DNA of 64,000 nucleotides from positions 266,209-330,208 of the IMG/VR virus record IMGVR_UViG_3300029983_000007. One strand, 5' to 3'. Shown here piece by piece: positions 3-39,338 of this stretch (position 1 is the first letter of the stretch; each line of letters opens with the position of its first letter). The notes beneath the pieces were generated by a model that worked only from the letters and a program-made list of their open reading frames with translations, did no database searches and had not been told where the DNA came from. Position numbers and translations under genes: made by a program.

Positions 3-347
3 CCAATTGGCGGTGCAACAGATGAAGAATACGATGAAGTTGCTCAGGAGAATTGCGATTGGTATGATGGAACATTACAATCAATAAAAGATGGCATCAA
101 TACTGTCAACTCTTTTGATTTTGCAAGTGAAGGACCAGATTTTGTATTGGGCATAAATTATGAAGGAAACTTAGAAGATGAATCAGCAGAATTTGGTGAT
201 CTTTATATTTTTTTTAAAGATTACAGAAAGATTGAACTGATTTTTGTTTATGATTGTAAAAAGGAGAAATATTATAGTCCACACATATTCAAAAATCTTT
301 ATCGTACTCCTGGATTATACAATAATATAGATAAATTTAACTTATGA
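3..347 (+). CDS. KFNL-tag family protein, 5'-truncated by window edge
   Basis: Frame is open from base 3; ends IDKFNL with ATGA overlap to next ORF. Confidence 0.8.
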   Translation, partial: PIGGATDEEYDEVAQENCDWYDGTLQSIKDGINTVNSFDFASEGPDFVLGINYEGNLEDESAEFGDLYIFFKDYRKIELIFVYDCKKEKYYSPHIFKNLYRTPGLYNNIDKFNL

Positions 348-697
348 AATATATAAAAAAATTTGAAAAATTTGAAAATATTCTAAAAATAGGAGATTAT
401 GTTTTGGCTATATCAAAGGCTAATGATGTGATTTTCACCAGTTATATTAACAATTCAATCGGTGAAGTAATTAAAATTACTCCTGTATATTCTAAAAATG
501 AAGGAAATAAATATAAAGTATACGATGATATTGATATTAGATATTATGGTGTACCAAAAAGTGAAATTGATTTGTTTACAAAAGAAAAAAAGCATAACTC
601 ATATAAAATAAAATTTCCTTCGTATATGATTTATAAATTTTCAGAAAATAAAGAAGAATTAGAAATTGAAATAAACGCAAATAAATTTAACTTATGA
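344..697 (+). CDS. Dual-tag (MKYIKKFE...KFNL) small protein, GDYV SH3/KOW-like subfamily
   Basis: MKYIKKFE start, IGDYVL motif, ANKFNL end, ATGA coupling. Confidence 0.85.
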   Translation: MKYIKKFEKFENILKIGDYVLAISKANDVIFTSYINNSIGEVIKITPVYSKNEGNKYKVYDDIDIRYYGVPKSEIDLFTKEKKHNSYKIKFPSYMIYKFSENKEELEIEINANKFNL

Positions 698-1005
698 AAT
701 ATATAAAAAAATTCGAACAGAATATAGATTTACCAGAAAGAGGTGATTATGTATTAATGAATAGTTATGGAATATCTGAAGTTGAATATTTTGTAACTCA
801 TAATTATGGAGTATATCTTAATGCTTATATTGATAAATTGACTAAAGATCCAAAAATTAGAGTTAGATATGAAAATATACCAGGCAACATAGCTTTGTTT
901 TTTCATGATGACACAATAACATTTGATATGGAGTTATTAGTTGCTTATGGTAAAACAATAGAAGAGTTAGAAATGAAATTAAAAGCAAATAAGTTTAACT
1001 TATGA
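694..1005 (+). CDS. Dual-tag small protein, GDYV subfamily
   Basis: MKYIKKFE, RGDYVL, VRYENIP, ANKFNL. Confidence 0.85.
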   Translation: MKYIKKFEQNIDLPERGDYVLMNSYGISEVEYFVTHNYGVYLNAYIDKLTKDPKIRVRYENIPGNIALFFHDDTITFDMELLVAYGKTIEELEMKLKANKFNL

Positions 1006-1331
1006 AATATATTAAAAAATTTGAATTGAATACAAATATACCTGAGATTGGTGATTATATATTGACAGTATATGACATAAAAAATGATAGAAATACTTCT
1101 ATTAATCAGTTAAAAAAATTCATAGATAATACCATAGGAATAGTAGTAGATGACTTAGAATTTGGTGTACATAATAATTATGTTCGTGTAAAATATGAAA
1201 ACATTCCTGAAAATATAAAGAATTTTTTTATAGATGATAGAAAGAGATTTAATATTGTTAGCATAGTTGATTATGATAAAGATTTAGAAACATTAAAATA
1301 TAAAATTGAAGCAAATAAATTTAACATATGA
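1002..1331 (+). CDS. Dual-tag small protein, GDYV subfamily
   Basis: MKYIKKFE, IGDYIL, VKYENIP, ANKFNI. Confidence 0.85.
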   Translation: MKYIKKFELNTNIPEIGDYILTVYDIKNDRNTSINQLKKFIDNTIGIVVDDLEFGVHNNYVRVKYENIPENIKNFFIDDRKRFNIVSIVDYDKDLETLKYKIEANKFNI

Positions 1332-1663
1332 AATATATAAGGAAGTTTGAAGAAAAAAATAGTGAACCAAAGGAAGGAGATTATGTATTAATGAATTCTA
1401 CAATGATGAATCCTAATCTAAATGAATTTATTGATAATGAAGTTGGTAAAATCGTAAAAATTGATGATAAACGTGGTTTCATATCAGTAGAAGTTGAATA
1501 TGAAAATATTCCTATGGAAATTGCAAGCTTATTTGGATATAATGATTATAAAAATCATGAAAATACAGGAATAAAAGTTTTTTTAATGAGTAGTATAATT
1601 GAATTTTCTGATAACAAAACAGATTTAGAATATAAAATAAACGCAAGAAAATTTAACTTATGA
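1328..1663 (+). CDS. Dual-tag small protein, GDYV subfamily
   Basis: MKYIRKFE, EGDYVL, VEYENIP, ARKFNL. Confidence 0.85.
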   Translation: MKYIRKFEEKNSEPKEGDYVLMNSTMMNPNLNEFIDNEVGKIVKIDDKRGFISVEVEYENIPMEIASLFGYNDYKNHENTGIKVFLMSSIIEFSDNKTDLEYKINARKFNL

Positions 1664-1998
1664 AACATATAAAAAAATTTGAAATATATAAACAGTGGGA
1701 TAATGAAAATAGATATTGGGAAGTGACATTGTTACGTCCATATTTTATTTTATCATTAAGAAAAATCGGAGTTCCAAATGATTTAATTGCGGAATGGGAT
1801 GAACAGTACTTAAATGAAGATCATATTGTATACGTATATAAAGAAGAAATTAAAAATTATGATAGTTTGATTGATGACTATGATATTATAACTGAATGGA
1901 GATTGCAGCTAGATAAAGATGACAGAGATAAATATATATTTGGAGGTAGAATTAAACTTAGAGAATTTGAAATAGATGCAGATAAATTTAACTTATGA
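1660..1998 (+). CDS. Dual-tag small protein (paralog of 37152-37469)
   Basis: MKHIKKFE ... EIDADKFNL. Confidence 0.85.
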   Translation: MKHIKKFEIYKQWDNENRYWEVTLLRPYFILSLRKIGVPNDLIAEWDEQYLNEDHIVYVYKEEIKNYDSLIDDYDIITEWRLQLDKDDRDKYIFGGRIKLREFEIDADKFNL

Positions 1999-2393
1999 GA
2001 TACATAAAAACTTTTGAAAGTTCTTTAAATCAAGAAGAAAAAGAAACATTACTAAATAATACTGCTTATTATTTAGAAGAAGTTATACCAAAAATAGAAG
2101 GATTTTAAGAATGCGTATGGTCAGCCACTGATTGGATTGATTATGATGTTGATAACGATGTTGAATTTACATTTTATTTTGATACTATGTATTTTGAAGA
2201 TGAGGAAGATTTTGAAAAATTTGAAGAGTTCTTAACTGAAAACAATTTAGATAATGATATAAAAGAGAGTTATTATGACATAAAAGATAATTTTATTAAT
2301 AAAAGAATGTTAAGCATGTCAATAAAAATACCAATAAAAAAGGTGATTGAATTAGGAGAGTTATATAATTCTATGCATAAATTTAACATATAA
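1995..2393 (+). pseudogene. Dual-tag family gene interrupted by one in-frame TAA (2106-2108)
   Basis: ATG 1995 gives MRYIKTFE...EGF-TAA; the same frame continues ECVWSATDW... to MHKFNI at 2393. Confidence 0.75.
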
Positions 2394-2410
2394 AAACCAA
2401 AATAAAAAAT

Positions 2411-2419
2411 TAATATATA
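2411..2419 (+). promoter_or_regulatory. TAATATATA putative phage late promoter
   Basis: Same 9-mer recurs upstream of tag-family clusters; analogy to T4 late TATAAATA. Confidence 0.5.
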
Positions 2420-2491
2420 ATTATAACCATATCAATATTTTATCATTTTTTTATTTAAAAATGAAGATAAAATTAATATAGAGTTATAATT

Positions 2492-2704
2492 ATGAAAGTT
2501 AAAATAAACGATTTAAATCAAATCACGAAAGAAATAGCATTAGATAAACTTTCTGAATCAAACACATTAGATTTAGATCAAATCGATGAATATCTTGATA
2601 TTTTATCTGCTTTGAAGGACGGAATGATTGTTTTTAATATATCAACAACTGCAGGAGATTATATATTATTTATAACTGCGAATCAATCTAAAAATTTAAT
2701 ATAA
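2492..2704 (+). CDS. Hypothetical protein
   Basis: 70-aa ORF co-oriented with cluster, downstream of TAATATATA. Confidence 0.65.
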   Translation: MKVKINDLNQITKEIALDKLSESNTLDLDQIDEYLDILSALKDGMIVFNISTTAGDYILFITANQSKNLI

Positions 2705-2707
2705 TTC

Positions 2708-3223
2708 ATGAAATACTTAAAAACTTTTGAGAAACAAAAAGAAAAGGAAAAAGAAGATATTATATTATATAAAAATGAGGATTTTACAATTACAGTAAAT
2801 GATAAAGGTAATATGACTTATTTTAATGATTATATGTCAAAATCTCCAATTTATGGTATAATGTTTGAAATAAAAAACAAATCTAAATATTTAAATGATA
2901 CTGAATTACGAGATATTAAAATAACAGAATCAGAAAAATACTTTGCTATATTATCATTAGATCCAAAATATGAAAGTAATAGGGTTAAATATCATTCCTC
3001 TATTATAAATAACTTCTTGATAAGAAATGGAAATAAAATAGAACTATCAGATATTTCAGATAAAGCTTACACAGCATTGAATGAAAGATATTTTCCTATG
3101 ATAGAAGATATTATAAAAAAATCTGAAACAATTGGTGATTTAATTGATTATTTTAAAGTTTTATATGATGAAATAACAGAGAATTTACCTACCTATTTGG
3201 CTACATCAAAATTTAACATATAA
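2708..3223 (+). CDS. Dual-tag protein, 171 aa
   Basis: MKYLKTFE ... ATSKFNI. Confidence 0.85.
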   Translation: MKYLKTFEKQKEKEKEDIILYKNEDFTITVNDKGNMTYFNDYMSKSPIYGIMFEIKNKSKYLNDTELRDIKITESEKYFAILSLDPKYESNRVKYHSSIINNFLIRNGNKIELSDISDKAYTALNERYFPMIEDIIKKSETIGDLIDYFKVLYDEITENLPTYLATSKFNI

Positions 3224-4414: not shown

Positions 4415-4421
4415 ATGTAAT

Positions 4422-10956: not shown

Positions 10957-11060
10957 AATATTTATATTATTAGAGATTATTAGAATGCAAAGATACTAAA
11001 TATAATTCGAATAAAAAAATATTATTTGTTTTTTTAAATTTTATTTTTAATGATTATATT

Positions 11061-11069
11061 TAATATATA
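11061..11069 (+). promoter_or_regulatory. TAATATATA putative late promoter
   Basis: Immediately upstream of MKYLKTFE start at 11077. Confidence 0.55.
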
Positions 11070-11076
11070 TAGTCAT

Positions 11077-11427
11077 ATGAAATACTTAAAAACATTTGAA
11101 TCATTATTATATAGTGATTATAAGGCTGGAGATTACGTACTACTTGATTTAATTAAAATAAAATCTAATAACAAAGATAATGATTATGAAATGGATGAAG
11201 TTGATGAATATGGCAATTCTATACCAATTGATGAATTTGCATTAATAAAGGATAAGACTGTTGAATTAAATAATGGACTTTATTTATATAGTGTAACTTT
11301 TTATAATTATAATAATGAAAAAAATGATTCTTATGGTGTTGAGTCAGATGAAATAATAAGAAAGCTAAATACAAATGAGATAGAAGAGTTCAACAGAAAA
11401 AAAGAAGCATTGAAATACAACATATGA
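11077..11427 (+). CDS. Dual-tag small protein, GDYV subfamily
   Basis: Likely start MKYLKTFE at 11077; AGDYVL; ends LKYNI. Confidence 0.8.
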   Translation: MKYLKTFESLLYSDYKAGDYVLLDLIKIKSNNKDNDYEMDEVDEYGNSIPIDEFALIKDKTVELNNGLYLYSVTFYNYNNEKNDSYGVESDEIIRKLNTNEIEEFNRKKEALKYNI

Positions 11428-11858
11428 AATATTTAAAAAAATTTGAAAATAGATTAACTAACGTATTTAAATCTAAAGATGTAGATATGTGGGATGAATA
11501 TATAGAAACTGAGTTAGAAACCGAATATGGATATAATAAACTCATTGGGGCTGTACATGCTGGAAATCTTAAAAGATTTGAATATTTATTACCAATATAT
11601 AAAAATAAAATAAATAATATTTATGATGGAAAGAATGTATTAATTGAGGTTATAATACGAGATATTGATTTATATGAAAAAAAGAAAATGATTGAATTAT
11701 TATTGGATAATGGAGTTAATTATAAGCTCGAGTTTGGAGGTGATACATTTTATGATTTGATTACTAATGATAAATTAAAAAAATGGTTTGACGATAAATA
11801 TCCAGATATAGTAAAAGAGCTTAATTTATATAAAAATACAAATAAATATAATTTATGA
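11424..11858 (+). CDS. Dual-tag protein with ankyrin-like repeats
   Basis: MKYLKKFE; LIGAVHAG, IELLLDNGVN; TNKYNL. Confidence 0.75.
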   Translation: MKYLKKFENRLTNVFKSKDVDMWDEYIETELETEYGYNKLIGAVHAGNLKRFEYLLPIYKNKINNIYDGKNVLIEVIIRDIDLYEKKKMIELLLDNGVNYKLEFGGDTFYDLITNDKLKKWFDDKYPDIVKELNLYKNTNKYNL

Positions 11859-12169
11859 AATATATAAAAACATTTGAAAAATTAGATAGAAAAATAAAAA
11901 AAGGAGATTATGCTATAATCGATTTTAAAACAACTAATCCTGGAGTTACAGAATTTTTTCAAAATAATATTAGTAAAATTATCGAAGTAAGAGGAATATG
12001 GATTAAATTTGGTTATAAATATGTACCAGAAGAAATCAAGGAATATTTTTATAAATCTAGAGTATATTATATATATCAAATAGAGTTAAACTTAGAAGAT
12101 GTTTACTCTTATGCTATCTCAAAAGAAAAATTAGAATTAGAATTATCAACAAAAAAATTCAACATATGA
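11855..12169 (+). CDS. Dual-tag small protein, GDY subfamily
   Basis: MKYIKTFE, KGDYA, TKKFNI. Confidence 0.8.
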   Translation: MKYIKTFEKLDRKIKKGDYAIIDFKTTNPGVTEFFQNNISKIIEVRGIWIKFGYKYVPEEIKEYFYKSRVYYIYQIELNLEDVYSYAISKEKLELELSTKKFNI

Positions 12170-12744
12170 AATATATAAAAACATTTGAATTATCAACTTT
12201 TTATGATGAAAAAGATATATTTTGGTATATCCATAATATTAATTTACCTAAAATTAAAGAATTAGTATCTGAAATACCTAATATTAATCTTAATATTAAA
12301 GATAGTACTGGTGAAACACCTTTGCTTCAGTCAGTTAGGTTTAGTTTATATAACGTGTTTAAATTTTTGATAGAATCAGGAGCAGATGTAAATTGTACAT
12401 GTACTAATGGAGTCACTCCATTGATGATAGCAGCAAGAAATAAAAAAGAAGAATTTGTTCAAGATTTAATAGATGCTCACGCAGATTTGAATATTAAAAA
12501 TGATGACGGCGAAACTGCATTAATTATGATTTCTAGCTACACAGATAAAAAGGCTTTTAAAATAATTGAAAACTTAATTGAAAGTGGTGCAGATTGGAAT
12601 ATATCTGATAATTATAATAATACTTTTTTGATGCATTTACAACCTGCATATATGAAAAAAATAATAGAAAAATATCCAGATAAATATGAAGAATTTATTA
12701 AAGAATATAATTTTAAAAATGATATAAAAAAATTCAATTTATGA
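12166..12744 (+). CDS. Dual-tag ankyrin-repeat protein
   Basis: GETPLL, GVTPLMIAA, GETALIM, LIESGAD repeats; IKKFNL. Confidence 0.9.
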   Translation: MKYIKTFELSTFYDEKDIFWYIHNINLPKIKELVSEIPNINLNIKDSTGETPLLQSVRFSLYNVFKFLIESGADVNCTCTNGVTPLMIAARNKKEEFVQDLIDAHADLNIKNDDGETALIMISSYTDKKAFKIIENLIESGADWNISDNYNNTFLMHLQPAYMKKIIEKYPDKYEEFIKEYNFKNDIKKFNL

Positions 12745-13142
12745 AATATATAAAAAAATTTGAAAGTGAAATATCAGATGATGAGAAAGCTATTTTGGAT
12801 AGTCAAAAAGCGGAAGATAATTATCTTAGACAAAGATATAAAGATATGAAGAAATATTTATTTTTTAAAGATAGAACGGGTAATATAGATAATGGAACAT
12901 ATTTTATATTAGAAAAAGATAGAATGGAAGCAGTATATGATCACACTAACCTTTTTATTGTGACTAACAAATTATATACATATAATTTGAACACAGATAA
13001 ATTGAAAAATGAAAAAAGAAAAGATAAGCATTACAATTTAAATAAATATAAACTTGGTTATATAATGACAGATTCAGATAATTTACAGGATTTATTAGAT
13101 TATATACCTGCTCTAAAACACACAAATAAATTTAATCTATGA
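12741..13142 (+). CDS. Dual-tag protein
   Basis: MKYIKKFE ... TNKFNL. Confidence 0.8.
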   Translation: MKYIKKFESEISDDEKAILDSQKAEDNYLRQRYKDMKKYLFFKDRTGNIDNGTYFILEKDRMEAVYDHTNLFIVTNKLYTYNLNTDKLKNEKRKDKHYNLNKYKLGYIMTDSDNLQDLLDYIPALKHTNKFNL

Positions 13143-13612
13143 AACACATTAAAACGTTTGAAAATGCATTCACTGACATATTTAAAAAAAGGAAGAAATT
13201 ACCTCACGAAGTTATTAATTTTGGTGATGTATTAACTAAATTTATAGAGAAAAATATTGATATGGAATGGGATGTTTATTCAAATACATATGAAAGTAGT
13301 AATAAAAAATATTATGATGTTGTAAGAATTTTTATTGACCCACATGATATAGATGATGCTGCTGAAGTTTTGGAATTGCATTATAATTATGATAGAAATT
13401 CTATTTTATATTGTTACCATCCAATAATGAATTTTATGGAAGATATTAAAGACTATTTAGGAAATATTGTAAAGAATAGTTCTATTGAAGATGTTTCATC
13501 TGCTGGAGATAATAGATATTGGATACCACTAGATAAATTACCTGAAATAATAAATAAAATAAATAGCTCTGATTTTGATTATTATAAGTCGACAAAAAAA
13601 TTTAACATATGA
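13139..13612 (+). CDS. Dual-tag protein
   Basis: MKHIKTFE ... TKKFNI. Confidence 0.8.
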   Translation: MKHIKTFENAFTDIFKKRKKLPHEVINFGDVLTKFIEKNIDMEWDVYSNTYESSNKKYYDVVRIFIDPHDIDDAAEVLELHYNYDRNSILYCYHPIMNFMEDIKDYLGNIVKNSSIEDVSSAGDNRYWIPLDKLPEIINKINSSDFDYYKSTKKFNI

Positions 13613-13986
13613 AATATATAAAAAAATTTGAACGTAAAAAGAATGAATTTTATACAATTAAAAATGAATTAATTAATGCTGTATATCATGGTAATTATTC
13701 TAAAACTAAAAAATTATTAGATTCTGGCTTTGATGTTAATAGTAATATAGATGGAAGAAATTCTGCATTATTATATGCTTCTTATAAAGGAGAATGGAAT
13801 ATTTTATTTCTAATATTAAAATATAATCCTGATTGGTACATAAAAGATATTTCAAAATATGATTTTATTGACTATATAAATGATCATATAGATGGAGATA
13901 AAGTAATAGAAAAAATAACAAAAAAATATCCTGTTAAATACAATGAGTATTTAATGATAAAAAAATCAGAAAAATTTAATTTATAA
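13609..13986 (+). CDS. Dual-tag ankyrin-repeat protein
   Basis: LINAVYHG, LLDSGFDVN, GRNSALLYA; SEKFNL. Confidence 0.85.
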   Translation: MKYIKKFERKKNEFYTIKNELINAVYHGNYSKTKKLLDSGFDVNSNIDGRNSALLYASYKGEWNILFLILKYNPDWYIKDISKYDFIDYINDHIDGDKVIEKITKKYPVKYNEYLMIKKSEKFNL

Positions 13987-13988
13987 AT

Positions 13989-14294
13989 ATGAAAGTAGAA
14001 AAATTTAATGAGCATAATTTTACAACATTTGATGATGATATTGTATATGCAGGTAAATCTAAATACCCAGTAGGCACCAAAATTAAATTTAAAGATGATG
14101 GTGAGTATTTAACTGGTACTTTGACACATCCATTTGGTTATGGTGATGTTGGTGTATTCTTAGATGAAAAAGGTAAATATAAATATGATAGGGTATCACT
14201 AAAAAACAATGAATATACAGTAATTGATGATGATGTTGATAAATTCATTAAAGATCACAATTTCAAAAAAGATATAAAAAAATTCAATTTATAA
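13989..14294 (+). CDS. Dual-tag protein (variant N-terminus MKVEKFNE)
   Basis: Ends IKKFNL. Confidence 0.8.
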   Translation: MKVEKFNEHNFTTFDDDIVYAGKSKYPVGTKIKFKDDGEYLTGTLTHPFGYGDVGVFLDEKGKYKYDRVSLKNNEYTVIDDDVDKFIKDHNFKKDIKKFNL

Positions 14295-19453: not shown

Positions 19454-19995
19454 GCAAACCAATTAAAATAATAGGTATAATATTATTTAGTTTTATACTT
19501 ATTTTTATAGCATATGAAATATTCATACCAACTAAAGATTATCCTTTTAGTAAAATTGAAATTGTTAATTATCATCATCTATATAACTTAACAAATAGAA
19601 CTTATCTAGATACAATTGTAGAATCAGGATTACAATCACTTAAAATTGATACTGTTACTGTTGTTATTAAAAATATTGATAAATCATCAATAGTAATTAA
19701 TGGCGAAGATATTGATTTGAAAGCATATATAGTAGTTAATAACGATACATATTATATATTTATTGGTGACTATAGTAGAAATGAAAGTATTACAATATTA
19801 TCTCATGAATTAATTCATTTAAGACAATATTATGACAAAATGTTATTAATTAGTAGAACAGGAGTTTATTTATGGCTTGGTGATGTTATAGATATATCAA
19901 ATATGGATTATAATCAAAGACCTTGGGAAATAGAAGCATTTGATAATCAATCAGATAATGCAAATGCAATGAAATATATTTTATATAAATTATAA
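19450..19995 (+). CDS. Membrane-anchored HExxH metallopeptidase-like protein
   Basis: N-terminal TM helix, LSHELIHLRQ, PWEIEA. Confidence 0.75.
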   Translation: MSKPIKIIGIILFSFILIFIAYEIFIPTKDYPFSKIEIVNYHHLYNLTNRTYLDTIVESGLQSLKIDTVTVVIKNIDKSSIVINGEDIDLKAYIVVNNDTYYIFIGDYSRNESITILSHELIHLRQYYDKMLLISRTGVYLWLGDVIDISNMDYNQRPWEIEAFDNQSDNANAMKYILYKL

Positions 19996-20337
19996 GTTGA
20001 ATTTTTTTGATGCATTAATTATATTATAAAACTCTTCTGTTGTAAATTTATTTGGAAAAAAGTATTTACTATCTCCGTCATCTTTATCACAAATAATATA
20101 TCCTTTTTTATCTCTAAGTGTTATTATATCTCCATCACCTATTTTATAAACATTATTATAAGATCTCTTACCATTATATTCTGAATATTTTAAAATAGAA
20201 TCAATAATATATATCTCACCATATTTCAAATAATTACTCTGAAGTCCAATATATATAATTTCATCACCTATTTTTAAATCATTTAAGTAATCAGGATTAT
20301 CATGTTGTACTTCATATATTTTAAAATTTGTTATCAT
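19990..20337 (-). CDS. Dual-tag protein (MITNFKIYE...KKFNL)
   Basis: Variant N-tag, IGDEI motif, C-tag. Confidence 0.8.
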   Translation of the reverse strand: MITNFKIYEVQHDNPDYLNDLKIGDEIIYIGLQSNYLKYGEIYIIDSILKYSEYNGKRSYNNVYKIGDGDIITLRDKKGYIICDKDDGDSKYFFPNKFTTEEFYNIINASKKFNL

Positions 20338-20687
20338 ATATTAAATTTATTAGTTTGTGTTAAAAATTCTAATTTTGATTTATCATCAGATATATGAATC
20401 AATTCTTCTAATGAAAAAGACATGGCATTTTTATATTTTTTGCTATAATCTATTTCGCTATGATAAATTTGATATGATTCTAAATAATCAGGAATATAAT
20501 CAAATTGAACTATAAATCTATCCCAACGATATTTAATATCAATAATTTCTATTATCTGTCCTATATTACTTAATGTAAAACTATTTAGTTCAGTAAAATC
20601 AATACTTTCACATATAACATAATCTCCAATAGATGGTAGTATTGATGATTTTTTATTTTTTTCATATATTTTAAAATCTGTTATCAT
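20334..20687 (-). CDS. Dual-tag protein (MITDFKIYE...NKFNI), GDYV subfamily
   Basis: IGDYVIC motif, ATGA coupling. Confidence 0.8.
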   Translation of the reverse strand: MITDFKIYEKNKKSSILPSIGDYVICESIDFTELNSFTLSNIGQIIEIIDIKYRWDRFIVQFDYIPDYLESYQIYHSEIDYSKKYKNAMSFSLEELIHISDDKSKLEFLTQTNKFNI

Positions 20688-20983
20688 ACATTAAAATTGT
20701 TGGATTTATTAATTAATTTCAGTCTATCTTCTAATATTTTTCTAACTGATGAGTATTTGTATACATCTTTTTTATCTATCCAAAAACCATCTTCATGATA
20801 ATAATCTTTAAAATCAATTTTATATTGTGATTTACTTTTATTTATTATTTTAAAAATATTATTGCTTATTTTGGTTTTATATTGAATATCATAATTTATT
20901 CCTTTAAGAACAGGTATAACATAATAATCAACAGGTATTTCTATCTGGTTATTAACAAATTCATATTTTTTTATATATTTCAT
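20684..20983 (-). CDS. Dual-tag protein (MKYIKKYE...NNFNV)
   Basis: Minus-strand TAATATATA at 21017-21025. Confidence 0.8.
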   Translation of the reverse strand: MKYIKKYEFVNNQIEIPVDYYVIPVLKGINYDIQYKTKISNNIFKIINKSKSQYKIDFKDYYHEDGFWIDKKDVYKYSSVRKILEDRLKLINKSNNFNV

Positions 20984-21089
20984 AATTATATTTTATAATT
21001 TATATTTTTGATATACTATATATTAAAAATAAAAATAACAATCTTATTTTTTTATATATAATATAAACAATAAAACAGCACAATTATAT

Positions 21090-22737: not shown

Positions 22738-23145
22738 ATGAAATATTTAAAAAAATATGAAATGTTAAACAAATTAGACACATCAGATAATCCTATATTT
22801 ATAGAATTTATGATTAATTTCATAACATCTTTAGATTATGACTTAACCACAAATTACAATAAAAAATACTCTAGAAATGAGATATTTTTTTATAACAAAG
22901 ATATAAATTCTGAGGGTTTAAAATTTTGTATTGAAATAACAAATGATGAATTAATTTTTAAAAAATACCATAATAATTTTAAGATTATTGAAGAATATTT
23001 AGAAACTATCAATGGATTAAATTTAATAAATATTGATCATCACATATACAACTTTAAGATATCAGGAAATACTCTAGATATCGAAGAACAGATAACAAAA
23101 AAGAATTTTGATATGTTTAGAGAAGCAAATAAATTTAATTTATGA
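22738..23145 (+). CDS. Dual-tag protein
   Basis: MKYLKKYE ... ANKFNL. Confidence 0.8.
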   Translation: MKYLKKYEMLNKLDTSDNPIFIEFMINFITSLDYDLTTNYNKKYSRNEIFFYNKDINSEGLKFCIEITNDELIFKKYHNNFKIIEEYLETINGLNLINIDHHIYNFKISGNTLDIEEQITKKNFDMFREANKFNL

Positions 23146-23483
23146 AATATTTAAAAAAGTTTGAATCTAAAGAAGTAGATTTATTTAATGCTATTGTAAA
23201 TGACAACACAAAAAGAGTTGAATATTTAATTAGACTTAATGCTGATATAAACATTCAAGATGCTGAAGGTAGAACTCCATTATTTTATGCAGCAAATCAT
23301 GATTTTATGAGTATTGTTAATATACTTATTGAAGCAGGAGCGGATTGGAATATTATTAACAACAAAGGATATGATTTTACATATTTATTAAGTGATAAAC
23401 AATTTGATTATATTATGAAAAAATATCCTGATGAATATAAAGAATATTTAATGAAAAAAACAGCAAACAAATTTAACTTATGA
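23142..23483 (+). CDS. Dual-tag ankyrin-repeat protein
   Basis: LFNAIVND, GRTPLFYAA, LIEAGADWN; ANKFNL. Confidence 0.9.
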   Translation: MKYLKKFESKEVDLFNAIVNDNTKRVEYLIRLNADINIQDAEGRTPLFYAANHDFMSIVNILIEAGADWNIINNKGYDFTYLLSDKQFDYIMKKYPDEYKEYLMKKTANKFNL

Positions 23484-23911
23484 ACCATTTAAAAATATAT
23501 GATAATTATAAAGATAAAATGAATTCAAAGAACAAATTCAATAATATGATAAATGAGTATATACCAGGATATTACATGATATATAAATCTAATACTTATC
23601 ATTGGAAGCAACATAGATACAATGAATATATAGTATTATGTAGAATTATAAATCCAGAAGTTTTTGATGAAGTGGATCTAAGATTAAACATAGATATTCT
23701 ATCTTATTTTTGTGAATTAGAACAACATGAATTAAGGGAAGATGAAAAAATAAAGACTGGAAAACAAATAATAAATCCAAATCATTCAACGTTTGAAAGA
23801 TTATTTTTGTCATCGTCATTAAAAACATCTCAAGATAAATTTGAAGAATTGAAAGAAACTACATATTATCAATGGGAATTAAATAAAGTCACAGATAAAT
23901 TTAACTTATGA
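23480..23911 (+). CDS. Dual-tag protein
   Basis: MNHLKIYD ... TDKFNL. Confidence 0.8.
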   Translation: MNHLKIYDNYKDKMNSKNKFNNMINEYIPGYYMIYKSNTYHWKQHRYNEYIVLCRIINPEVFDEVDLRLNIDILSYFCELEQHELREDEKIKTGKQIINPNHSTFERLFLSSSLKTSQDKFEELKETTYYQWELNKVTDKFNL

Positions 23912-24294
23912 AAACATTCAATCAATACAATGAATCTATAAAAAATAAACATTTTCCTATATATTTTAGAAGATATTATGAATCAGGTAGATATAAAATA
24001 TCAGATATATATTACGACATTGAACAAGCAAATAAATATAGTATTGAATATGTTCTATTTAATAATACCACTAAAGGAGATGAGTTCTTTTACTTATATT
24101 TATTTCCATGTAATGAAAATGAATCTAAAATTATTAGTTCTGAGTTAATAGGTATGTTTAATCTATCAAGTATATTTAATGAAGACTTAACAACAGAAGA
24201 AAATATAGAATTAATAAAAACATCAAAAAATGCGAATATTATAAATTTAGAAGATGTAAATTTAATAATAAATTCAAATAAATTTAATATATGA
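23908..24294 (+). CDS. Dual-tag protein, T4-CTS-like start MKTFNQYNE
   Basis: Paralog of next two ORFs; INSNKFNI. Confidence 0.8.
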   Translation: MKTFNQYNESIKNKHFPIYFRRYYESGRYKISDIYYDIEQANKYSIEYVLFNNTTKGDEFFYLYLFPCNENESKIISSELIGMFNLSSIFNEDLTTEENIELIKTSKNANIINLEDVNLIINSNKFNI

Positions 24295-24722
24295 AAACAT
24301 TTATACAGTTCAATGAAACTGAAAATTATGGAGAACCAATGTACAGTAATACAAATAGAATAACTCTTAACCTTTATTCTTATAATGACGAAGAAAATGA
24401 TTTTCCTCTTTTAGAACGAGATATCAAAAAATTAGAAGAAAATAATATTTATTATATTATAATTAGTACAACAGACAATTATATTAACTCTACACAATTT
24501 CAAACAATGTTTAAAATTTATGCATTACCAAAAAATAAAGAACAGAGAGATATAACTTATTATAATATGAATTTTTCTTATAATACTAAAATTAACATAG
24601 AATACAATGGTGAAAATTTAGATGAAGTTTTAGATGCAATTAAAAAAAGAAATAAAAATTTTTCAATCATAAATAAAGAAGACTTATATGTTATTATAAA
24701 TTCAAATAAATTTAATATATGA
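24291..24722 (+). CDS. Dual-tag protein, start MKTFIQFNE
   Basis: INSNKFNI end. Confidence 0.8.
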   Translation: MKTFIQFNETENYGEPMYSNTNRITLNLYSYNDEENDFPLLERDIKKLEENNIYYIIISTTDNYINSTQFQTMFKIYALPKNKEQRDITYYNMNFSYNTKINIEYNGENLDEVLDAIKKRNKNFSIINKEDLYVIINSNKFNI

Positions 24723-25078
24723 AAACATATCAACAATTTAATGAAATGAGCAATGTTGGATGTACTATATTTTTCAAAGTATATTTTAAATTTGAAAATG
24801 TGTATAAACAAATTGAGATATTAGATGAAAATAGAATAGATTATGATATATCTTATCATAATAAATTCATTAAAATAGATGCTTATGCTTATTCTATAAG
24901 TGAGTATAATTTTCTTATATCAATTGAATTCAAAATAAATAAAAAATCACAAGAACTAATAAATCCAAATATGTCACTTGATAAAATTAGAAGTATTGTA
25001 AAATCAGACAAAGGTTGGACGCCAACAAGTAAAGAAGAATTACCATACATTAATGATATAAATAAATTCAACTTATGA
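24719..25078 (+). CDS. Dual-tag protein, start MKTYQQFNE
   Basis: INKFNL end. Confidence 0.8.
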   Translation: MKTYQQFNEMSNVGCTIFFKVYFKFENVYKQIEILDENRIDYDISYHNKFIKIDAYAYSISEYNFLISIEFKINKKSQELINPNMSLDKIRSIVKSDKGWTPTSKEELPYINDINKFNL

Positions 25079-25581
25079 AATATATAAAAAGATTTGAAAG
25101 TATAATAACAGAATTGAATTACTCAAGTAAAGGATTAACTTCTTTACCTGAGTTGCCTGATACATTAAAGAATTTGGGATGTCATCATAATAAATTAAGA
25201 TATCTACCAGAATTACCAACTACATTAGAAGAATTGTTTTGTGGCGATAATGAGTTAAAAAAATTGCCAACTTTACCAAACACAATAACAAATTTAATGA
25301 TTCATCATAATGATTTGACAGAATTGCCAGATCTACCAGATTCATTGATAAATTTTTCATGTGGGCATAATAATTTAACTGAAATACCAAAATTACCAAA
25401 TAATTTAGTATATTTTTTATGTGATAATAATAATTTATCTGAATTACCAGAAATGCCAGAAACTGTAACTCAATTTAGTTGTAAGTATAATAATTTACCA
25501 TATGAAGATTTGAATGGATATTGGGATTGGTTTTATGATAGAAATCCAGAAAGAAAACAAGCAAAAAAATTCAACTTATGA
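25075..25581 (+). CDS. Dual-tag leucine-rich-repeat protein
   Basis: Repeated LxxLPxLPxxLxxLxCxxN 20-aa units; AKKFNL. Confidence 0.9.
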   Translation: MKYIKRFESIITELNYSSKGLTSLPELPDTLKNLGCHHNKLRYLPELPTTLEELFCGDNELKKLPTLPNTITNLMIHHNDLTELPDLPDSLINFSCGHNNLTEIPKLPNNLVYFLCDNNNLSELPEMPETVTQFSCKYNNLPYEDLNGYWDWFYDRNPERKQAKKFNL

Positions 25582-26093
25582 GATATTTAAAAAAATTTGA
25601 AAAATATAATGCATCTTTAGATTTAAATTATATTTTAGAAGATGATGTATATAGTGATTCAGATGCAATAAAATTATTAAAAAAAGTGAAATATGCTATT
25701 GACAATGATTGTGTTATTGATAATATTAATATACATTGGATGGAAAGAACTCCTTTAATTACATGCGCTGTTTTAGACTGTCATATAAAAACCCAGTCTA
25801 AATATAGAAATATATTTGAGCAAATAGCAAAAGAACTAATTAATTCAGGAGCTAATATAAATCATATAGATAAAGATAACAGAAGTGCTTTAATATGGGC
25901 TACAGATAGAGGACATTTTGATGTAATGGAACTATTAATTGAAAATGGCGCAGATTGGAATATTATGGATGTATTCCATCATGAATTTCATGAATATTTG
26001 AGTGATGAACATTTTGAAAAAATTATTCATAAATATCCAGAACAATATGAATTGTATAACATGAAAAACAACACGAACAAATTCAATTTATGA
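25578..26093 (+). CDS. Dual-tag ankyrin-repeat protein
   Basis: RTPLITCA, LINSGANIN, RSALIWAT, LIENGADWN. Confidence 0.9.
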   Translation: MRYLKKFEKYNASLDLNYILEDDVYSDSDAIKLLKKVKYAIDNDCVIDNINIHWMERTPLITCAVLDCHIKTQSKYRNIFEQIAKELINSGANINHIDKDNRSALIWATDRGHFDVMELLIENGADWNIMDVFHHEFHEYLSDEHFEKIIHKYPEQYELYNMKNNTNKFNL

Positions 26094-26581
26094 AACATAT
26101 AAAAACATATACTCAGAAAGAATTGGATGATAATTTGTTGAAATATTCAGCAAAACAGGCATCTTTGCAAAAAGTAAGAGAATTGATAACAGATGGAGCT
26201 AACGTTAATTGTTTTGATCGTATCAGATATAACACGCCATTAATTAACGCATCACAACAACTAAATTATAGTACAATTAAATTGTTAATAGAAAATGGTG
26301 CTGATATAAATTTAGTAAATAAAAACAATAAAAATTGTATATTTTATATTGTTAATCAAAACACATATACTTATACTAAATATAAAAATAAAATTAATAA
26401 TATAATTGATTTATTAATTTCATCTGGAATAAATTTAAACAATAAAAATAAAAGTGATGTTGATATTTTTGATAATATTCAAGAATCAAATCCTTTTATT
26501 CTTCAATATATAATAGATAATTATCCAGAAGAATACAAAGAATATTTAATGAAAAAAACTGCAAACAAATTTAACTTATGA
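26090..26581 (+). CDS. Dual-tag ankyrin-repeat protein
   Basis: LITDGANVN, NTPLINAS, LIENGADIN; ANKFNL. Confidence 0.9.
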   Translation: MKHIKTYTQKELDDNLLKYSAKQASLQKVRELITDGANVNCFDRIRYNTPLINASQQLNYSTIKLLIENGADINLVNKNNKNCIFYIVNQNTYTYTKYKNKINNIIDLLISSGINLNNKNKSDVDIFDNIQESNPFILQYIIDNYPEEYKEYLMKKTANKFNL

Positions 26582-26898
26582 AATATATTAAAGCATATGA
26601 AACAGTTGAAGTCTGGAACGATAATAAAAGGATAAAAACATATGATTCATCAGAATACGAATTAAGTGATTATGTGATTTTGAATAAGCTTTATTTTCCA
26701 GATATAAGTGATAATTACACATATCTTATAGGTAAAATAATAGACATTTCAGAAAATAATAATATGTTTTATTGGGTTATTAAATTACCAGATAAAAAAG
26801 TAGTATGGACTGGAGATTATGAAATACATAAAACTATAACAAAAGAAGAATATGAAACGCTAGAAATAAAAAATTCATCAGATAAATATAATATATAA
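26578..26898 (+). CDS. Dual-tag small protein
   Basis: MKYIKAYE, SDYVIL, SDKYNI. Confidence 0.8.
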   Translation: MKYIKAYETVEVWNDNKRIKTYDSSEYELSDYVILNKLYFPDISDNYTYLIGKIIDISENNNMFYWVIKLPDKKVVWTGDYEIHKTITKEEYETLEIKNSSDKYNI

Positions 26899-36831: not shown

Positions 36832-37155
36832 ATGAAATATATAAAGAAATTTGAAAATACTGAAGATAAACCAAAAGTTGGTGATTATGTATTGATATCA
36901 ATTGATAATGATGAAGAAAATGATTTTTACTCTAATAATCCAGGACAAATTATTAAATTTTTTACTCTACAAAAATATAGGTTTACAGTTATGATATCAT
37001 ATGGTAAAAACATTCCTGATAACATGAAAAATATATTATTACTTAATAAAAGATGTGGTTATTATAAAATTTTTGACTATGAAGATATCTTCATATTTTC
37101 TAAAAATAAAGAAGATTTAAAACTAAAAATAGCATCAAATAAATTTAACTTATGA
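36832..37155 (+). CDS. Dual-tag GDYV protein (close paralog of 37466 and 37786)
   Basis: PKVGDYVL, NNPGQIIKFF, ASNKFNL. Confidence 0.85.
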   Translation: MKYIKKFENTEDKPKVGDYVLISIDNDEENDFYSNNPGQIIKFFTLQKYRFTVMISYGKNIPDNMKNILLLNKRCGYYKIFDYEDIFIFSKNKEDLKLKIASNKFNL

Positions 37156-37469
37156 AATATATAAAATCATTTGAAAAAATAAATAATACAATTCATTATA
37201 AAATTCCAGCATATCCGTTAGAAGTATATTTTATTGCAATAACTAAAATTGGTATGACACAAGATGAAATATCTCATTGGATTAATAATAAATACGCTCA
37301 ATATTGGAATAACTCACATTTTAAATTTATATATTTAAATAACACATACAATGATTATACTAAAAAATATCAATGGAGTTGGACAAATAACATAAATAAA
37401 GCAAATGAGACTGTAATAGAAATAACTGTTGAAGATTATGAAATTGATGCAAACAAATTTAACATATGA
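37152..37469 (+). CDS. Dual-tag protein (paralog of 1660-1998)
   Basis: MKYIKSFE ... EIDANKFNI. Confidence 0.85.
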   Translation: MKYIKSFEKINNTIHYKIPAYPLEVYFIAITKIGMTQDEISHWINNKYAQYWNNSHFKFIYLNNTYNDYTKKYQWSWTNNINKANETVIEITVEDYEIDANKFNI

Positions 37470-37789
37470 AATACATTAAGAAATTTGAAATGATTGAAGA
37501 TAGCCCAAAAGTTGGAGATTATGTCTTAATGAATATTAGTTATGATAAAAATTCAGATTTTTATCTTAATTATCCAGGTAAAATAATTAAATTTTTTACA
37601 ATAGGAAAATATCGTCAAGGTGTAAATATATCATATGGAGATAATATTCCTGATAATATGACAGAAATATTAGGGTATACAAAAAAACATGGATATTATA
37701 AAAATTTTCAATATAAAGAGATATATGCATTTTCAAAAAATAAAGAAGATTTAAAAATTAAAATAAGCGCAAATAAATTCAATATATGA
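37466..37789 (+). CDS. Dual-tag GDYV protein
   Basis: PKVGDYVL, NYPGKIIKFF, SANKFNI. Confidence 0.85.
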   Translation: MKYIKKFEMIEDSPKVGDYVLMNISYDKNSDFYLNYPGKIIKFFTIGKYRQGVNISYGDNIPDNMTEILGYTKKHGYYKNFQYKEIYAFSKNKEDLKIKISANKFNI

Positions 37790-38154
37790 AATACTTGAAA
37801 AAATTTGAAGATAATATAAATGAGCCTGAAGTTGGAGATTATGTATCTATAATAGGTAAAAAATTTATTAATCATTTAAGAAGATACTATGATGATAAAG
37901 ATATTGTTAATTTGAAAAAATATCTTCTTAATTTTCCTGGAAAAATTCATAGTACCTTTAATGATAAAAGAATAGGTGTGACATATGGTTTTGATGTTCC
38001 AGAAGATGTAAAAAAATTTTTACAATATGATAAACCTTATGGAGGTTACAATAAAATATTTAATTATGAAGATATAAATGCATTTGGAAAAACAATAGAA
38101 GAATTAAAATATAAAATAGAACTTAAAAATAACATTAACAAATTTAATATATGA
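37786..38154 (+). CDS. Dual-tag GDYV protein
   Basis: PEVGDYV, NFPGKI, INKFNI. Confidence 0.85.
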   Translation: MKYLKKFEDNINEPEVGDYVSIIGKKFINHLRRYYDDKDIVNLKKYLLNFPGKIHSTFNDKRIGVTYGFDVPEDVKKFLQYDKPYGGYNKIFNYEDINAFGKTIEELKYKIELKNNINKFNI

Positions 38155-38462
38155 AATACATAAAATCATTCAAAAATAAAAATTTAGAATATGAGGTAGG
38201 AGATTGTGTTAAAATAAAAATAATTCCTGATTATGTAAGTCATATAGAAAGAATTGAAGATAATTTATTTGTAAAAATAATAGAAATGAATTTTTTGACG
38301 AATCATAATAATAGTGATATTGATAATATATTTATTGTGTTTGAAACATTAATCACTAAACAAAAAATATCTGGTAATATATATTTCATTTCTAAAAAAA
38401 TGACTGAATCAGAAATAGATTATTGTAAGATTAAATCAGAAACAAATAAATTCAACTTATGA
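38151..38462 (+). CDS. Dual-tag protein
   Basis: MKYIKSFK, VGDCV, TNKFNL. Confidence 0.8.
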   Translation: MKYIKSFKNKNLEYEVGDCVKIKIIPDYVSHIERIEDNLFVKIIEMNFLTNHNNSDIDNIFIVFETLITKQKISGNIYFISKKMTESEIDYCKIKSETNKFNL

Positions 38463-38752
38463 AATACTTAAAAAAATTTGAAGATATTGAAAATACTCCA
38501 GAAATTGGTGATTACATTATTCCAAATGTAGAAACATTGAATCATCTTATTGACAATAAAATTAATAATCATGTATATCAAATAATAGGAACAAAAGAAA
38601 GAAATATGGGTGGTTTTTTATATATCATTAAAGTAAAATTGAATGATAATCAATTAGATGACTGGTATTTATCCAATTATGAAATAATGCATTTATCAAA
38701 AAACAAAGAAGATTTAGAAGTATTATTACAATCAAATAAATTTAACATATGA
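38459..38752 (+). CDS. Dual-tag GDY protein
   Basis: PEIGDYI, SNKFNI. Confidence 0.85.
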   Translation: MKYLKKFEDIENTPEIGDYIIPNVETLNHLIDNKINNHVYQIIGTKERNMGGFLYIIKVKLNDNQLDDWYLSNYEIMHLSKNKEDLEVLLQSNKFNI

Positions 38753-39030
38753 AATATATAAAAACATTTGAAAGAATTAATTATTATATACCAGAAAAAG
38801 GTGATTATGTTATTTGTGGTGGTAATAATACATGGGATAGTAAATTCGCAAAATTTATATCAAACAACATTGGAGTATTAATAAATCATTTACCTAATCA
38901 ATATAGAATAGATTATGATTATATTGATCCATATTCAATATATTTAACAAATAGAAAAGATATATTATATTGGTCAAGTGATAAGAAAGAATTAGAAGAA
39001 ATTCTACAAGCAAACAAATTTAATTTATGA
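38749..39030 (+). CDS. Dual-tag GDYV protein
   Basis: KGDYVIC, ANKFNL. Confidence 0.85.
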   Translation: MKYIKTFERINYYIPEKGDYVICGGNNTWDSKFAKFISNNIGVLINHLPNQYRIDYDYIDPYSIYLTNRKDILYWSSDKKELEEILQANKFNL

Positions 39031-39338
39031 AACACATTAAAACATTTGAAAATAATTATGAATATGCAGAAGTTGGAGATTATGTTATTATTAATGTGAA
39101 TAATCTAAAATTCAGCAATGATAATATAGGTAATATTTACAAGAAAATGTTAACTGATAATGTATATAAAATAATTGACAGTAAAATAGTATCAGGAAAC
39201 AGACAAATATATCTAATTGATTTATATGACGATGAACATATTAACGGATATTATATTGATAGTAAGAATGTATTAGCATTTGATAAAGATAAAGAATTTG
39301 TTAAATGTAAAAATGATATAAACAAATATAATTTATAA
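39027..39338 (+). CDS. Dual-tag GDYV protein
   Basis: VGDYVI, INKYNL. Confidence 0.85.
   Translation: MKHIKTFENNYEYAEVGDYVIINVNNLKFSNDNIGNIYKKMLTDNVYKIIDSKIVSGNRQIYLIDLYDDEHINGYYIDSKNVLAFDKDKEFVKCKNDINKYNL

What the first reader, a model, noticed from the sequence alone, without database searches (positions are those of the whole stretch)
23908..25078. Three tandem paralogs begin with near-literal T4 capsid-targeting sequences
Seen: MKTFNQYNE, MKTFIQFNE and MKTYQQFNE, each also ending in the NKFNI/L tag. Known: the T4 IPIII CTS is MKTYQEFIAE. This is the clearest bridge from the MKYIKKFE family to a characterised signal. Variants MITNFKIYE, MKVEKFNE, MKIKKFKELNE and MISKYNDFILE fit a loose M-K-x-x-x-x-F/Y-x-E consensus.
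Basis: partly seen in the sequence, partly recalled or inferred. Interest (0 to 1): 0.6.

Follow-up and report, generated by a model that had tools for sequence, protein, structure and literature searches.

The report
Terminal address tags on megaphage proteins
The three genes belong to a set of over 100 unrelated small proteins in a roughly 0.7-Mb peat megaphage that all share a short N-terminal leader and a C-terminal K-F-N-L/I ending, most likely sorting signals (possibly for loading into the capsid), so the T4 look-alike start is a local variant of that leader and not a literal T4 signal.

Summary
Three ATGA-overlapping ORFs start MKTFNQYNE, MKTFIQFNE and MKTYQQFNE and end NKFNI, NKFNI and NKFNL. 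T4 IPII and IPIII do start MKTYQEFIAE.

The trio is 3 of about 102-106 genes (18%) in a 330-kb record of a Mahaphage-type peat megaphage. All pair an N-leader (MKYIKKFE, MITNFKIFE or MKIxKFNE) with a C-terminal K-F-N-[L/I] (odds ratio 226). The cores are unrelated: ankyrin, LRR, SH3-like, alpha/beta.

Selection acts on the protein. KFN is 96% conserved between relatives against 66% for cores, with normal synonymous change. Identical junction DNA also drives whole-cassette gain and loss; gene 2 is such an indel.

An ortholog of gene 3 in a relative starts MKYIKEYED, so the MKT form is drift within the family leader.

Two other huge phages share the N-leader but use different second motifs (DPYGEExW, DMGEMGF). 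DPYGEExW is also the C-terminal tail of head-maturation proteases in the lineage of one of them. This gives indirect support for a procapsid-loading role.

Against a T4-like reading: the proteins are acidic, the C-tag has no T4 counterpart, and this phage's protease was not found. The function remains inferred.

The parts
23908..24294 (+). Gene 1, 128 aa, MKTFNQYNE...SNKFNI; no Pfam or PHROG family
24291..24722 (+). Gene 2, 143 aa, MKTFIQFNE...SNKFNI; absent from a relative at about 85% identity (a whole-cassette indel)
24719..25078 (+). Gene 3, 119 aa, MKTYQQFNE...INKFNL. The AlphaFold2 model (pLDDT 83) shows an alpha/beta core, a low-confidence N-leader (residues 4-9 below 50) and a C-terminal helix at 105-117
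23908..23934 (+). N-leader of gene 1 (9 codons). The same element lies at 24291-24317 and 24719-24745
24280..24291 (+). C-tag codons K-F-N-I of gene 1. The same element lies at 24708-24719 (gene 2) and 25064-25075 (gene 3, K-F-N-L)
24268..24300 (+). 33-nt junction repeat (C-tag, ATGA overlap, start of N-leader). It is identical to 24696-24728. The recombinant junction in the relative is a chimera of the two
22738..26898 (+). Array of 10 tagged genes holding the trio (unknown, ankyrin, unknown, g1, g2, g3, LRR, ankyrin, ankyrin, unknown). It sits 4 nt downstream of a PPK2-HAD gene and has no terminator-like site on its coding strand
21047..21061 (+). Promoter-like T-run plus ATATAT motif 41-43 nt upstream of the PPK2 gene that heads the array. 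The same motif precedes the first gene of most tagged arrays
344..3223 (+). Tagged genes at 344-1998 (five in tandem), 2187-2393 and 2708-3223
11050..14294 (+). Array of eight tagged genes
19990..20983 (-). Three tagged genes (MITNFKIYE, MITDFKIYE, MKYIKKYE)
36832..39338 (+). Array of eight tagged genes, mostly the SH3-like family of about 105 aa
26903..27472 (+). Two genes with loose leader-like starts (MISKYNDFILE, MKIKKFKELNE) but no C-tag

Best explanation
The three genes are ordinary members of a very large set of small accessory proteins in a roughly 0.7-Mb Mahaphage-type megaphage from peat. Structurally unrelated, mostly acidic domains are each framed by two short peptides. One is a flexible N-terminal leader of 8-9 residues ending in Glu (MKYIKKFE, MITNFKIFE, MKIxKFNE; here the local form MKT[FY]xQ[FY]NE). 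The other is a C-terminal helix that ends in K-F-N-[L/I] at the free carboxyl end. SHOWN: the peptides are modular, they co-occur, and they are kept by selection on the amino acids. The near-identical DNA at gene junctions lets whole cassettes be duplicated, deleted or swapped by unequal recombination. INFERRED: the two peptides are address labels read by one phage machine. The leading candidate is incorporation into the procapsid, analogous to the T4 capsid-targeting sequence and to protease or encapsulin C-terminal loading peptides. The N-leader may then be removed after its Glu by an S77-type head-maturation protease, and the cargo delivered into the host with the DNA as an anti-defence or host-takeover arsenal.
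For: Scale: 102 of 556 genes are tagged. With the tags trimmed, the cores fall into 62 BLAST clusters, including ankyrin (11-13 genes), LRR (2) and a 24-member SH3-like family. Coupling: N- and C-tags co-occur with odds ratio 226. Selection: in 68 ortholog pairs at 65% identity, KFN is 96% conserved and the N-leader 78%, against 66% for cores. Synonymous differences at identical residues are 26%, 18% and 22% respectively. Independence from coupling: 28 tagged genes with no same-strand gene within 10 nt downstream keep the tag, several followed by hairpins plus T-runs. Structure: AlphaFold2 gives a low-confidence N-leader and a C-terminal helix in two unrelated cores. Cassette turnover occurs exactly at junctions. 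Relatives: the N-leader recurs in LR756501 (735 kb) and in a 727-kb ENA scaffold, with different second motifs, DPYGEExW and DMGEMGF. In LR756501, 24 of 42 leader genes carry DPYGEE against 67 of 952 others (p = 6e-16). DPYGEExW is also the C-terminal tail, after a variable linker, of a protein matching phrog_207 head maturation protease (E 3e-19) and of 27 of the 235 S77-like proteases recovered. The four tagged genes in the ENA scaffold lie beside a gp13-type neck gene. The promoter-like motif upstream of arrays also precedes a collagen-like fibre gene and a gene whose PTm5 homolog lies next to a neck gene. T-even internal proteins are described as diverse defence proteins sharing only the CTS (PMC3012670).
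Against: No virion, cleavage or binding data exist. The tags are absent from every cultured relative tested. This phage's head protease, capsid and scaffold genes are not in the 330-kb record, and no protease ending in the K-F-N-[L/I] tag was found among 235 homologs; two merely end ...DSFNL and ...DAFNV, the domain's own terminus. The protease of the DMGEMGF lineage has no tail. The tagged proteins are acidic, unlike the basic T4 IPs. Residues around the Glu do not fit T4 L/I-x-E or phiKZ S/A/G-x-E rules (both from my own knowledge). Tagging 18% of genes is a great deal of cargo. A second tag in this genome, RKxKLxKLN, looks more like known protease tails than KFN[L/I] does.
Confidence: 0.42

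Rival explanations
1. The two peptides are recognition signals for a different common handler, not the capsid. Candidates are a phage or host chaperone or unfoldase, a timed-degradation system (the C-terminal basic-hydrophobic ending acting as a degron), or import into or export from a phage-made compartment.
For: The tags must sit at the extreme ends, and the free C-terminus is invariant, as with C-terminal degrons or PTS1-type signals (my own knowledge). The record encodes an Hsp70-like protein: the 624-aa ORF starts MGKIIGIDLGSY and matches only phrog_22485, of unknown function, so the Hsp70 reading is mine. The cargo is acidic and looks cytoplasmic-effector-like, with ankyrin, LRR and a DMP19 DNA-mimic-like hit. 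No protease of this lineage carrying the tag was found.
Against: No receptor candidate was identified. It does not explain why the partner motif in a relative is the tail of the head-maturation protease, or why tagged genes sit beside neck genes.
Confidence: 0.28
2. The conserved gene ends are primarily a DNA or RNA element, serving as a recombination site for cassette shuffling or as a termination-reinitiation signal at the ATGA overlap. On this view peptide conservation is a by-product.
For: 53 of 90 same-strand junctions downstream of a tagged gene are ATGA overlaps. The last codon is xTA in 98 of 106 cases, even with a TAA stop. AAC is used for Asn in 49% of tags against 13% genome-wide. 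The two junctions of the trio share 33 identical nt although the cores are only 29% identical, and a relative carries the recombinant junction.
Against: Between phages, synonymous sites in the tags change as fast as in the cores while the amino acids stay fixed. Tags persist on the first and last genes of arrays and before terminator-like hairpins. The N-leader is conserved in a 32% GC genome with different junctions.
Confidence: 0.08
3. The ends are structural. N- and C-terminal peptides pair within one protein or between proteins (head-to-tail), giving a common handle or polymer.
For: The two tags co-occur strictly. The leader is basic, while an acidic E-E-L-E patch lies upstream of KFN.
Against: AlphaFold2 leaves the leader at low confidence in both models. 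I could not measure the distance between the termini. No complex prediction was run.
Confidence: 0.08
4. The trio's leaders are true homologs of the T4 internal-protein CTS, by common descent or transfer from a T4-like phage.
For: 6 of 7 identities to MKTYQEF in gene 3.
Against: An ortholog of gene 3 carries MKYIKEYED instead. The similarity spans only 7-9 residues in a 24% GC genome. No T4-type genes were found nearby and the cores show no similarity to T4 IPs.
Confidence: 0.04

Closest known systems
T4 internal proteins IPI/IPII/IPIII and their capsid-targeting sequence
   Same: A short leader at the extreme N-terminus (MKT[YF]..F...E) sits on small, otherwise unrelated, fast-turning-over accessory proteins. 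The leader is the only conserved part (PMC3012670).
   Different: This phage is not T4-like. There are over 100 genes instead of 3. There is an obligatory, better-conserved C-terminal K-F-N-[L/I] tag. The cargo is acidic, not basic. The cleavage context differs, and neither processing nor packaging is shown.
C-terminal targeting tails of capsid maturation proteases (HK97 gp4) and encapsulin cargo-loading peptides (from my own knowledge, not tested here)
   Same: A short conserved peptide at the very C-terminus follows a variable linker. In relatives the equivalent motif (DPYGEExW) is the tail of S77-like head-maturation proteases and is shared with dozens of other proteins.
   Different: Sequences are unrelated. 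For KFN[L/I] itself no protease or shell partner is known. Here it is paired with an N-leader.
Ejection and inner-body proteins of giant phages (phiKZ, SPN3US) processed by the prohead protease
   Same: A large capsid carries many packaged proteins, with N-terminal propeptides removed after Glu (PMC5694885 and PMC7411985, listed and seen there as abstracts only; the cleavage rule is my own knowledge).
   Different: Those proteins share no uniform linear tags at both ends. Their cleavage motif is S/A/G-x-E. No homology was detected.
Hyperplastic regions and mobile regulatory cassettes (PeSL) of T4-type genomes (my own knowledge)
   Same: Short repeated sequences between accessory genes mediate modular shuffling. 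Here a cassette indel with a chimeric junction is documented.
   Different: Here the repeat is coding (the end of one gene overlapping the start of the next), it is under amino-acid selection, and it contains no promoter or stem-loop.

Membership tests
T4-type CTS-bearing internal proteins | Leader MKT[YF].EF... at the extreme N-terminus | tested here: met
   Identities to MKTYQEF are 6/7 for gene 3, 4/7 for gene 2 and 3/7 for gene 1. T4 sequences were read. The rest of the family shares only M1, K2, F7 and a Glu at position 8-9.
T4-type CTS-bearing internal proteins | Cleavage by a gp21-type protease after L/I-x-E | not testable with these tools
   Sequence context only: P3 is F in the trio, K/T/S in MKYIKKFE and I in MITNFKIFE. 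The rule itself is from my own knowledge.
T4-type CTS-bearing internal proteins | Phage encodes a T4-like prohead protease and scaffolding core | tested here: inconclusive
   No S77 hit in the 330-kb record (46% complete) or in three related IMG/VR contigs. S77-like genes are present in complete relatives.
T4-type CTS-bearing internal proteins | Small basic proteins packed with the DNA | tested here: not met
   Median pI is 5.3, and only 21% exceed pI 8. T4 IPs have pI 9.0-9.7.
T4-type CTS-bearing internal proteins | Presence in virions | not testable with these tools
   The phage is uncultured. The tags are absent from cultured relatives.
Protease-tail / encapsulin-like C-terminal cargo-loading peptide | Conserved peptide at the free C-terminus, separable from the folded domain, on unrelated cargo | tested here: met
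   K 103/106, F or Y 106/106, N 106/106 and L, I or V 106/106 at the last four positions, on 62 core clusters. It forms the end of a C-terminal helix in two models.
Protease-tail / encapsulin-like C-terminal cargo-loading peptide | The same peptide on a protein known to reside inside the procapsid | tested here: inconclusive
   Met for DPYGEExW in the LR756501 lineage. Not shown for KFN[L/I], because this lineage's protease was not identified.
Nucleotide-level recombination or regulatory cassette | Conservation at the DNA level exceeding what the protein requires | tested here: not met
   Synonymous differences in the tags equal those in the cores between phages. Local homogenisation of adjacent junctions does occur.

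The most novel reading that the evidence does not exclude
Huge Mahaphage-type phages use a two-part peptide address code. It combines a clade-wide N-terminal leader with lineage-specific second peptides: KFN[L/I], DPYGEExW and DMGEMGF. A further tail, RKxKLxKLN, lacks the leader. The second peptides are borrowed from, or shared with, the tail of the head-maturation protease. The code loads 50 to over 100 different small effector proteins into the procapsid for co-injection, which would be by far the largest injected-protein arsenal of any virus of bacteria. The arsenal is renewed by cassette recombination at the tag-coding junctions.
Probability: 0.3. Interest if true: 0.85.

Novelty: new variant of a known kind. 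Interest (0 to 1): 0.7.

Why it matters
If the tags are loading signals, they explain a sizeable share of the 'dark' genes of the largest known phages. They would define, by sequence alone, which proteins are delivered into the host. They would also give portable peptides for packaging foreign proteins into large capsids.

Even without the function, the finding provides a simple and highly specific marker: terminal motifs on 9-18% of genes. It offers a clean natural example of protein-level tags whose coding DNA also acts as a recombination substrate. It also yields a directly testable prediction through virion mass spectrometry and tag-GFP encapsidation.

No description of these motifs was found in the searchable literature.

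Tried and rejected
- Pfam and PHROGs on the trio found nothing above cut-off.
- Foldseek against the PDB, for the SH3-like model and for the gene 3 model, gave only weak hits (E at least 0.03).
- A homolog search with the trio returned only themselves and four orthologs, all keeping the tags.
- tblastn of a family member against GenBank phages found no match.
- The KFN[IL]-stop DNA motif is not enriched in LR756501 or LR745206.
- N-leader DNA patterns gave 0 hits in PAU, PTm5, pT24, Lak-A1 and MaF61.
- The hunt for this lineage's head protease failed. I tried Pfam S77 and S78 scans, a local profile search of the record, an IMG/VR scan, a word-based profile search and the full representative search. 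It yielded 235 S77-like proteins. None carries the K-F-N-[L/I] tag, and the AT-rich candidates belong to other phages.
- The 711-kb contig carrying these genes could not be scanned whole.
- The sigma-70 and terminator scan of the array was uninformative: 82 sites against 79 expected.
- No alternative genetic code was needed.
- Complex prediction was not used, because no partner is known.
- The translational-coupling-only and DNA-only readings were rejected as sole explanations.

Full report
**1. What is there**

The window is the last 64 kb of a 330,208-bp IMG/VR virus record with 24% GC, estimated 46% complete.

A conserved 1,059-aa protein places the phage nearest to the 634-735-kb 'uncultured phage' genomes LR745206 and LR756501-4. 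Sphingomonas phage PAU, Tenacibaculum jumbo phages and Lak phages follow. This is the Mahaphage clade, whose largest members are predicted to infect Bacteroidetes (PMC7162821).

The same genes occur on a 711-kb contig. The region occurs in many peat metagenomes.

The three ORFs are exactly as described. They are 23908-24294 (MKTFNQYNE...SNKFNI), 24291-24722 (MKTFIQFNE...SNKFNI) and 24719-25078 (MKTYQQFNE...INKFNL). Each stop overlaps the next start as ATGA.

T4 was checked directly: IPIII and IPII begin MKTYQEFIAE, and IPI begins MKTFKEFTSTTTPVSTITE.

**2. The trio is part of a very large tagged set**

- In the whole record, 106 ORFs of at least 40 aa end [FY]N[ILV], against about 2 expected.
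- After greedy gene calling, 102 of 556 genes (18%) are tagged. They are concentrated at 206-306 kb of the record, and 36 lie in the window.
- The last four residues are K (103/106), F or Y (106/106), N (106/106) and L, I or V (106/106). Upstream lies a looser E-E-L-x-h-x-h-x-[TAS]-[NK] stretch.
- N-termini fall into a few classes: MKYIKKFE-like (about 60), MITNFKIFE-like, MK[IV]xKFNE-like, and the local MKT form.
- The two ends are tightly coupled. Counts are 73 genes with both tags, 29 with the C-tag and a looser leader, 5 with the leader only and 449 with neither. That gives odds ratio 226, p = 1e-60.
- With both ends trimmed, the cores fall into 62 BLAST clusters.
- Pfam finds ankyrin repeats in 11 members and LRR in 2. 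It finds single hits for ExoX-like_C and DMP19 and a marginal one for CBM39 (E 6e-4), and nothing in the rest.
- A 24-member family of about 105 aa models as an SH3/Tudor-like barrel.
- The tags are therefore modular labels on unrelated domains, not relics of one paralogous family.

**3. The trio itself**

Genes 1 and 2 align end to end (29% identity, E 7e-8). Gene 3 matches them only over the N-terminal stretch: 18 residues of gene 2, 48 of gene 1.

AlphaFold2 on gene 3 with its orthologs gives an alpha/beta core with mean pLDDT 83. The leader is modelled with low confidence (residues 4-9 below 50). The C-terminal helix spans residues 105-117 and its tip is uncertain.

The SH3-like member shows the same layout. 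Residues 1-10 score below 50 and the C-tag ends helix 89-101.

**4. Protein-level or DNA-level conservation**

I compared 68 ortholog-like pairs between this record and related IMG/VR contigs. Mean amino-acid identity was 65%; the contigs are mostly 75-85% identical in DNA, with a few near-identical.

| Region | Amino-acid identity | Synonymous differences at identical residues |
|---|---|---|
| K-F-N | 96% | 26% |
| N-leader | 78% | 18% |
| Core | 66% | 22% |

The constraint is therefore on the amino acids.

- Tags persist on the 28 tagged genes that have no same-strand gene within 10 nt downstream. Several of these are followed by hairpins plus T-runs.
- Tags also persist on first genes that sit behind intergenic regions.
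- DNA-level features do exist. The last codon is xTA in 98 of 106 cases, even before TAA.
- AAC encodes the Asn in 49% of tags against 13% genome-wide.
- The two junctions of the trio share an identical 33-nt stretch, 24268-24300 and 24696-24728.

**5. Cassette dynamics, and the origin of the T4-like form**

In one relative (loci L050, L103, L075), gene 1 is followed directly by gene 3, and gene 2 is absent. The junction there is a chimera: the gene-1 3' end, then the first bases of the gene-2 leader, then the gene-3 sequence. This is what unequal recombination between the two junction repeats would produce.

The LRR gene is replaced in that relative by an unrelated tagged gene.

In a second relative (L028), genes 1 and 2 are missing. 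The gene-3 ortholog (52-55% identical) starts MKYIKEYED.

So MKT[FY]xQ[FY]NE is a drift variant of the family leader. Its near-identity to the T4 CTS is most simply coincidence within a shared loose pattern: M-K-x-hydrophobic-x-x-aromatic, then Glu.

**6. Wider distribution**

- The junction motif occurs in 87 stretches of other IMG/VR contigs. That includes contigs with no detectable DNA similarity to this record.
- These loci add 250 further distinct tagged ORFs.
- The tags are absent from PAU, PTm5, pT24, Lak-A1 and MaF61. They have no homologs in GenBank phages.

*LR756501 (735 kb, 32% GC).* It lacks KFN[L/I]. However, 42 of its genes start with the same leader class, such as MIKKFKLFE and MITKYNIFE. 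Its second motif, (L/E)DPYGEExW, occurs in about 90 of 994 proteins: at the extreme C-terminus in 40 and within the first 30 residues in 20. Leader and motif co-occur: 24 of 42 against 67 of 952, p = 6e-16.

*ENA scaffold (727 kb, 26% GC).* It has four tandem genes of the form MKYIKYFE...DMGEMGF, next to a gp13-type neck or adaptor gene.

**7. The link to the capsid**

LR756501 gene 11314-11850(-) matches phrog_207 head maturation protease (E 3e-19) and Pfam S77 at 24.7 bits, below the cut-off of 27. After a variable linker it ends ...LDPYGEENWSE.

In all, 27 of the 235 S77-like proteases recovered from metagenomes keep this tail.

A maturation protease must be built into the procapsid. In HK97 its C-terminal tail is the targeting signal, and encapsulins load cargo through C-terminal peptides; both points are my own knowledge. 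So in that lineage, the motif shared by dozens of small proteins is plausibly a procapsid-loading peptide, and the N-leader travels with it.

By analogy, the leader plus KFN[L/I] pair here would have the same job. This is inference. I could not find this lineage's protease. The protease of the DMGEMGF lineage has no tail.

Weak extra support comes from a promoter-like T-run plus ATATAT motif. It lies mostly 17-46 nt upstream of the first gene of most arrays. It also precedes a collagen-like fibre gene and the 1,059-aa gene, whose PTm5 homolog lies beside a neck gene.

**8. Points against a T4-like reading**

- The tagged proteins are acidic: median pI 5.3 against 6.8 for untagged small proteins, p = 3e-5. 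T4 IPs have pI 9.0-9.7.
- The strongest signal is C-terminal, and T4 IPs have no equivalent.
- Residues before the Glu do not fit known protease rules.
- 18% of genes is a large cargo list.
- A second, leader-less C-terminal tag exists in this genome...RKxKLxKLN.., on 25 genes against 0.2 expected. It resembles the tails of other S77-like proteases more closely than KFN[L/I] does.

**9. Verdict**

The family-wide bipartite tag, its protein-level selection and its junction-mediated cassette turnover are shown.

Capsid targeting is the best-supported function, but it is unproven (about 0.4). A different common handler is the main rival.

No published description of these motifs was found.

Noticed in passing
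LR756501 (loci L128-L166), e.g. L128:11317-11850(-), and arrays at 499-506 kb and 552-561 kb of the record: About 90 of 994 proteins of the 735-kb Mahaphage carry the short motif (L/E)DPYGEExW, at the extreme C-terminus in 40 and just after an MIKKFxxFE leader in about 12. The same motif is the C-terminal tail of its S77-like head-maturation protease and of 27 of 235 related proteases. A small protein resembling the tail-sheath C-terminal domain also carries it. No literature hit was found.
   Followed up: partly
window 10328-10624(-), 39333-39668(-), 55315-55530(-), 61314-61754(-), 4151-4414(-), 43900-44124(-), and 19 more in the record: There is a second, leader-less C-terminal tag, ...[YL]RKxKLxKLN.., on 25 of 556 genes (0.2 expected). 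Most are small proteins, some with an SH3-like 'IKIGDKL' start. Similar basic tails end several S77-like proteases of other phages. None occurs in LR756501.
   Followed up: partly
locus L252:386-3094(-) (ENA GROS21-1 scaffold_4, 726.6 kb, 26% GC): Four tandem genes of the form MKYIKYFE...DMGEMGF lie directly beside a gp13-type head-tail adaptor gene, about 7 kb from an S77-like protease that has no tail. This is a third lineage with the same N-leader and yet another C-terminal motif.
   Followed up: partly
record-wide; in the window 21047-21061(+) and upstream of 36832: A promoter-like motif, TTTTTT(A)ATATAT, lies mostly 17-46 nt upstream of the first gene of most tagged arrays and of a few large putative structural genes. 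The antisense strand of the MKYIKKFE coding DNA matches the same motif.
   Followed up: partly
window 21090-22733(+): A polyphosphate kinase 2 fused to a HAD domain of the 'Swiss Army Knife RNA repair' type heads the focal array. It is conserved at 90-93% in relatives while the array behind it turns over.
   Followed up: no
window 40627-42087(+) and 39715-40608(+): A TnpB/IS605 OrfB-like gene (Cas12f-like TNB domain) lies next to a gene with a sub-threshold radical-SAM match, immediately after a tagged array.
   Followed up: no
window 3952-4900(-): Four tandem genes of 71-87 aa start M[KR]YLCKKxY or MRLKCIKTY, forming another small paralog family with conserved ends.
   Followed up: no
record 1378-33935 (loci L010, L011): There are several large HNH/homing-endonuclease genes. 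The family-B-type DNA polymerase is split into separate ORFs, one of 453 aa next to homing endonucleases and another of 493 aa at 111.5-113.0 kb.
   Followed up: no
tag codons record-wide: The final sense codon is ATA or TTA, almost never ATT, even when the stop is TAA and no gene overlaps. Asn at position -2 uses AAC in 49% of tags against 13% genome-wide. Both remain unexplained; they may be a relic of ATGA junctions or a termination-context effect.
   Followed up: partly
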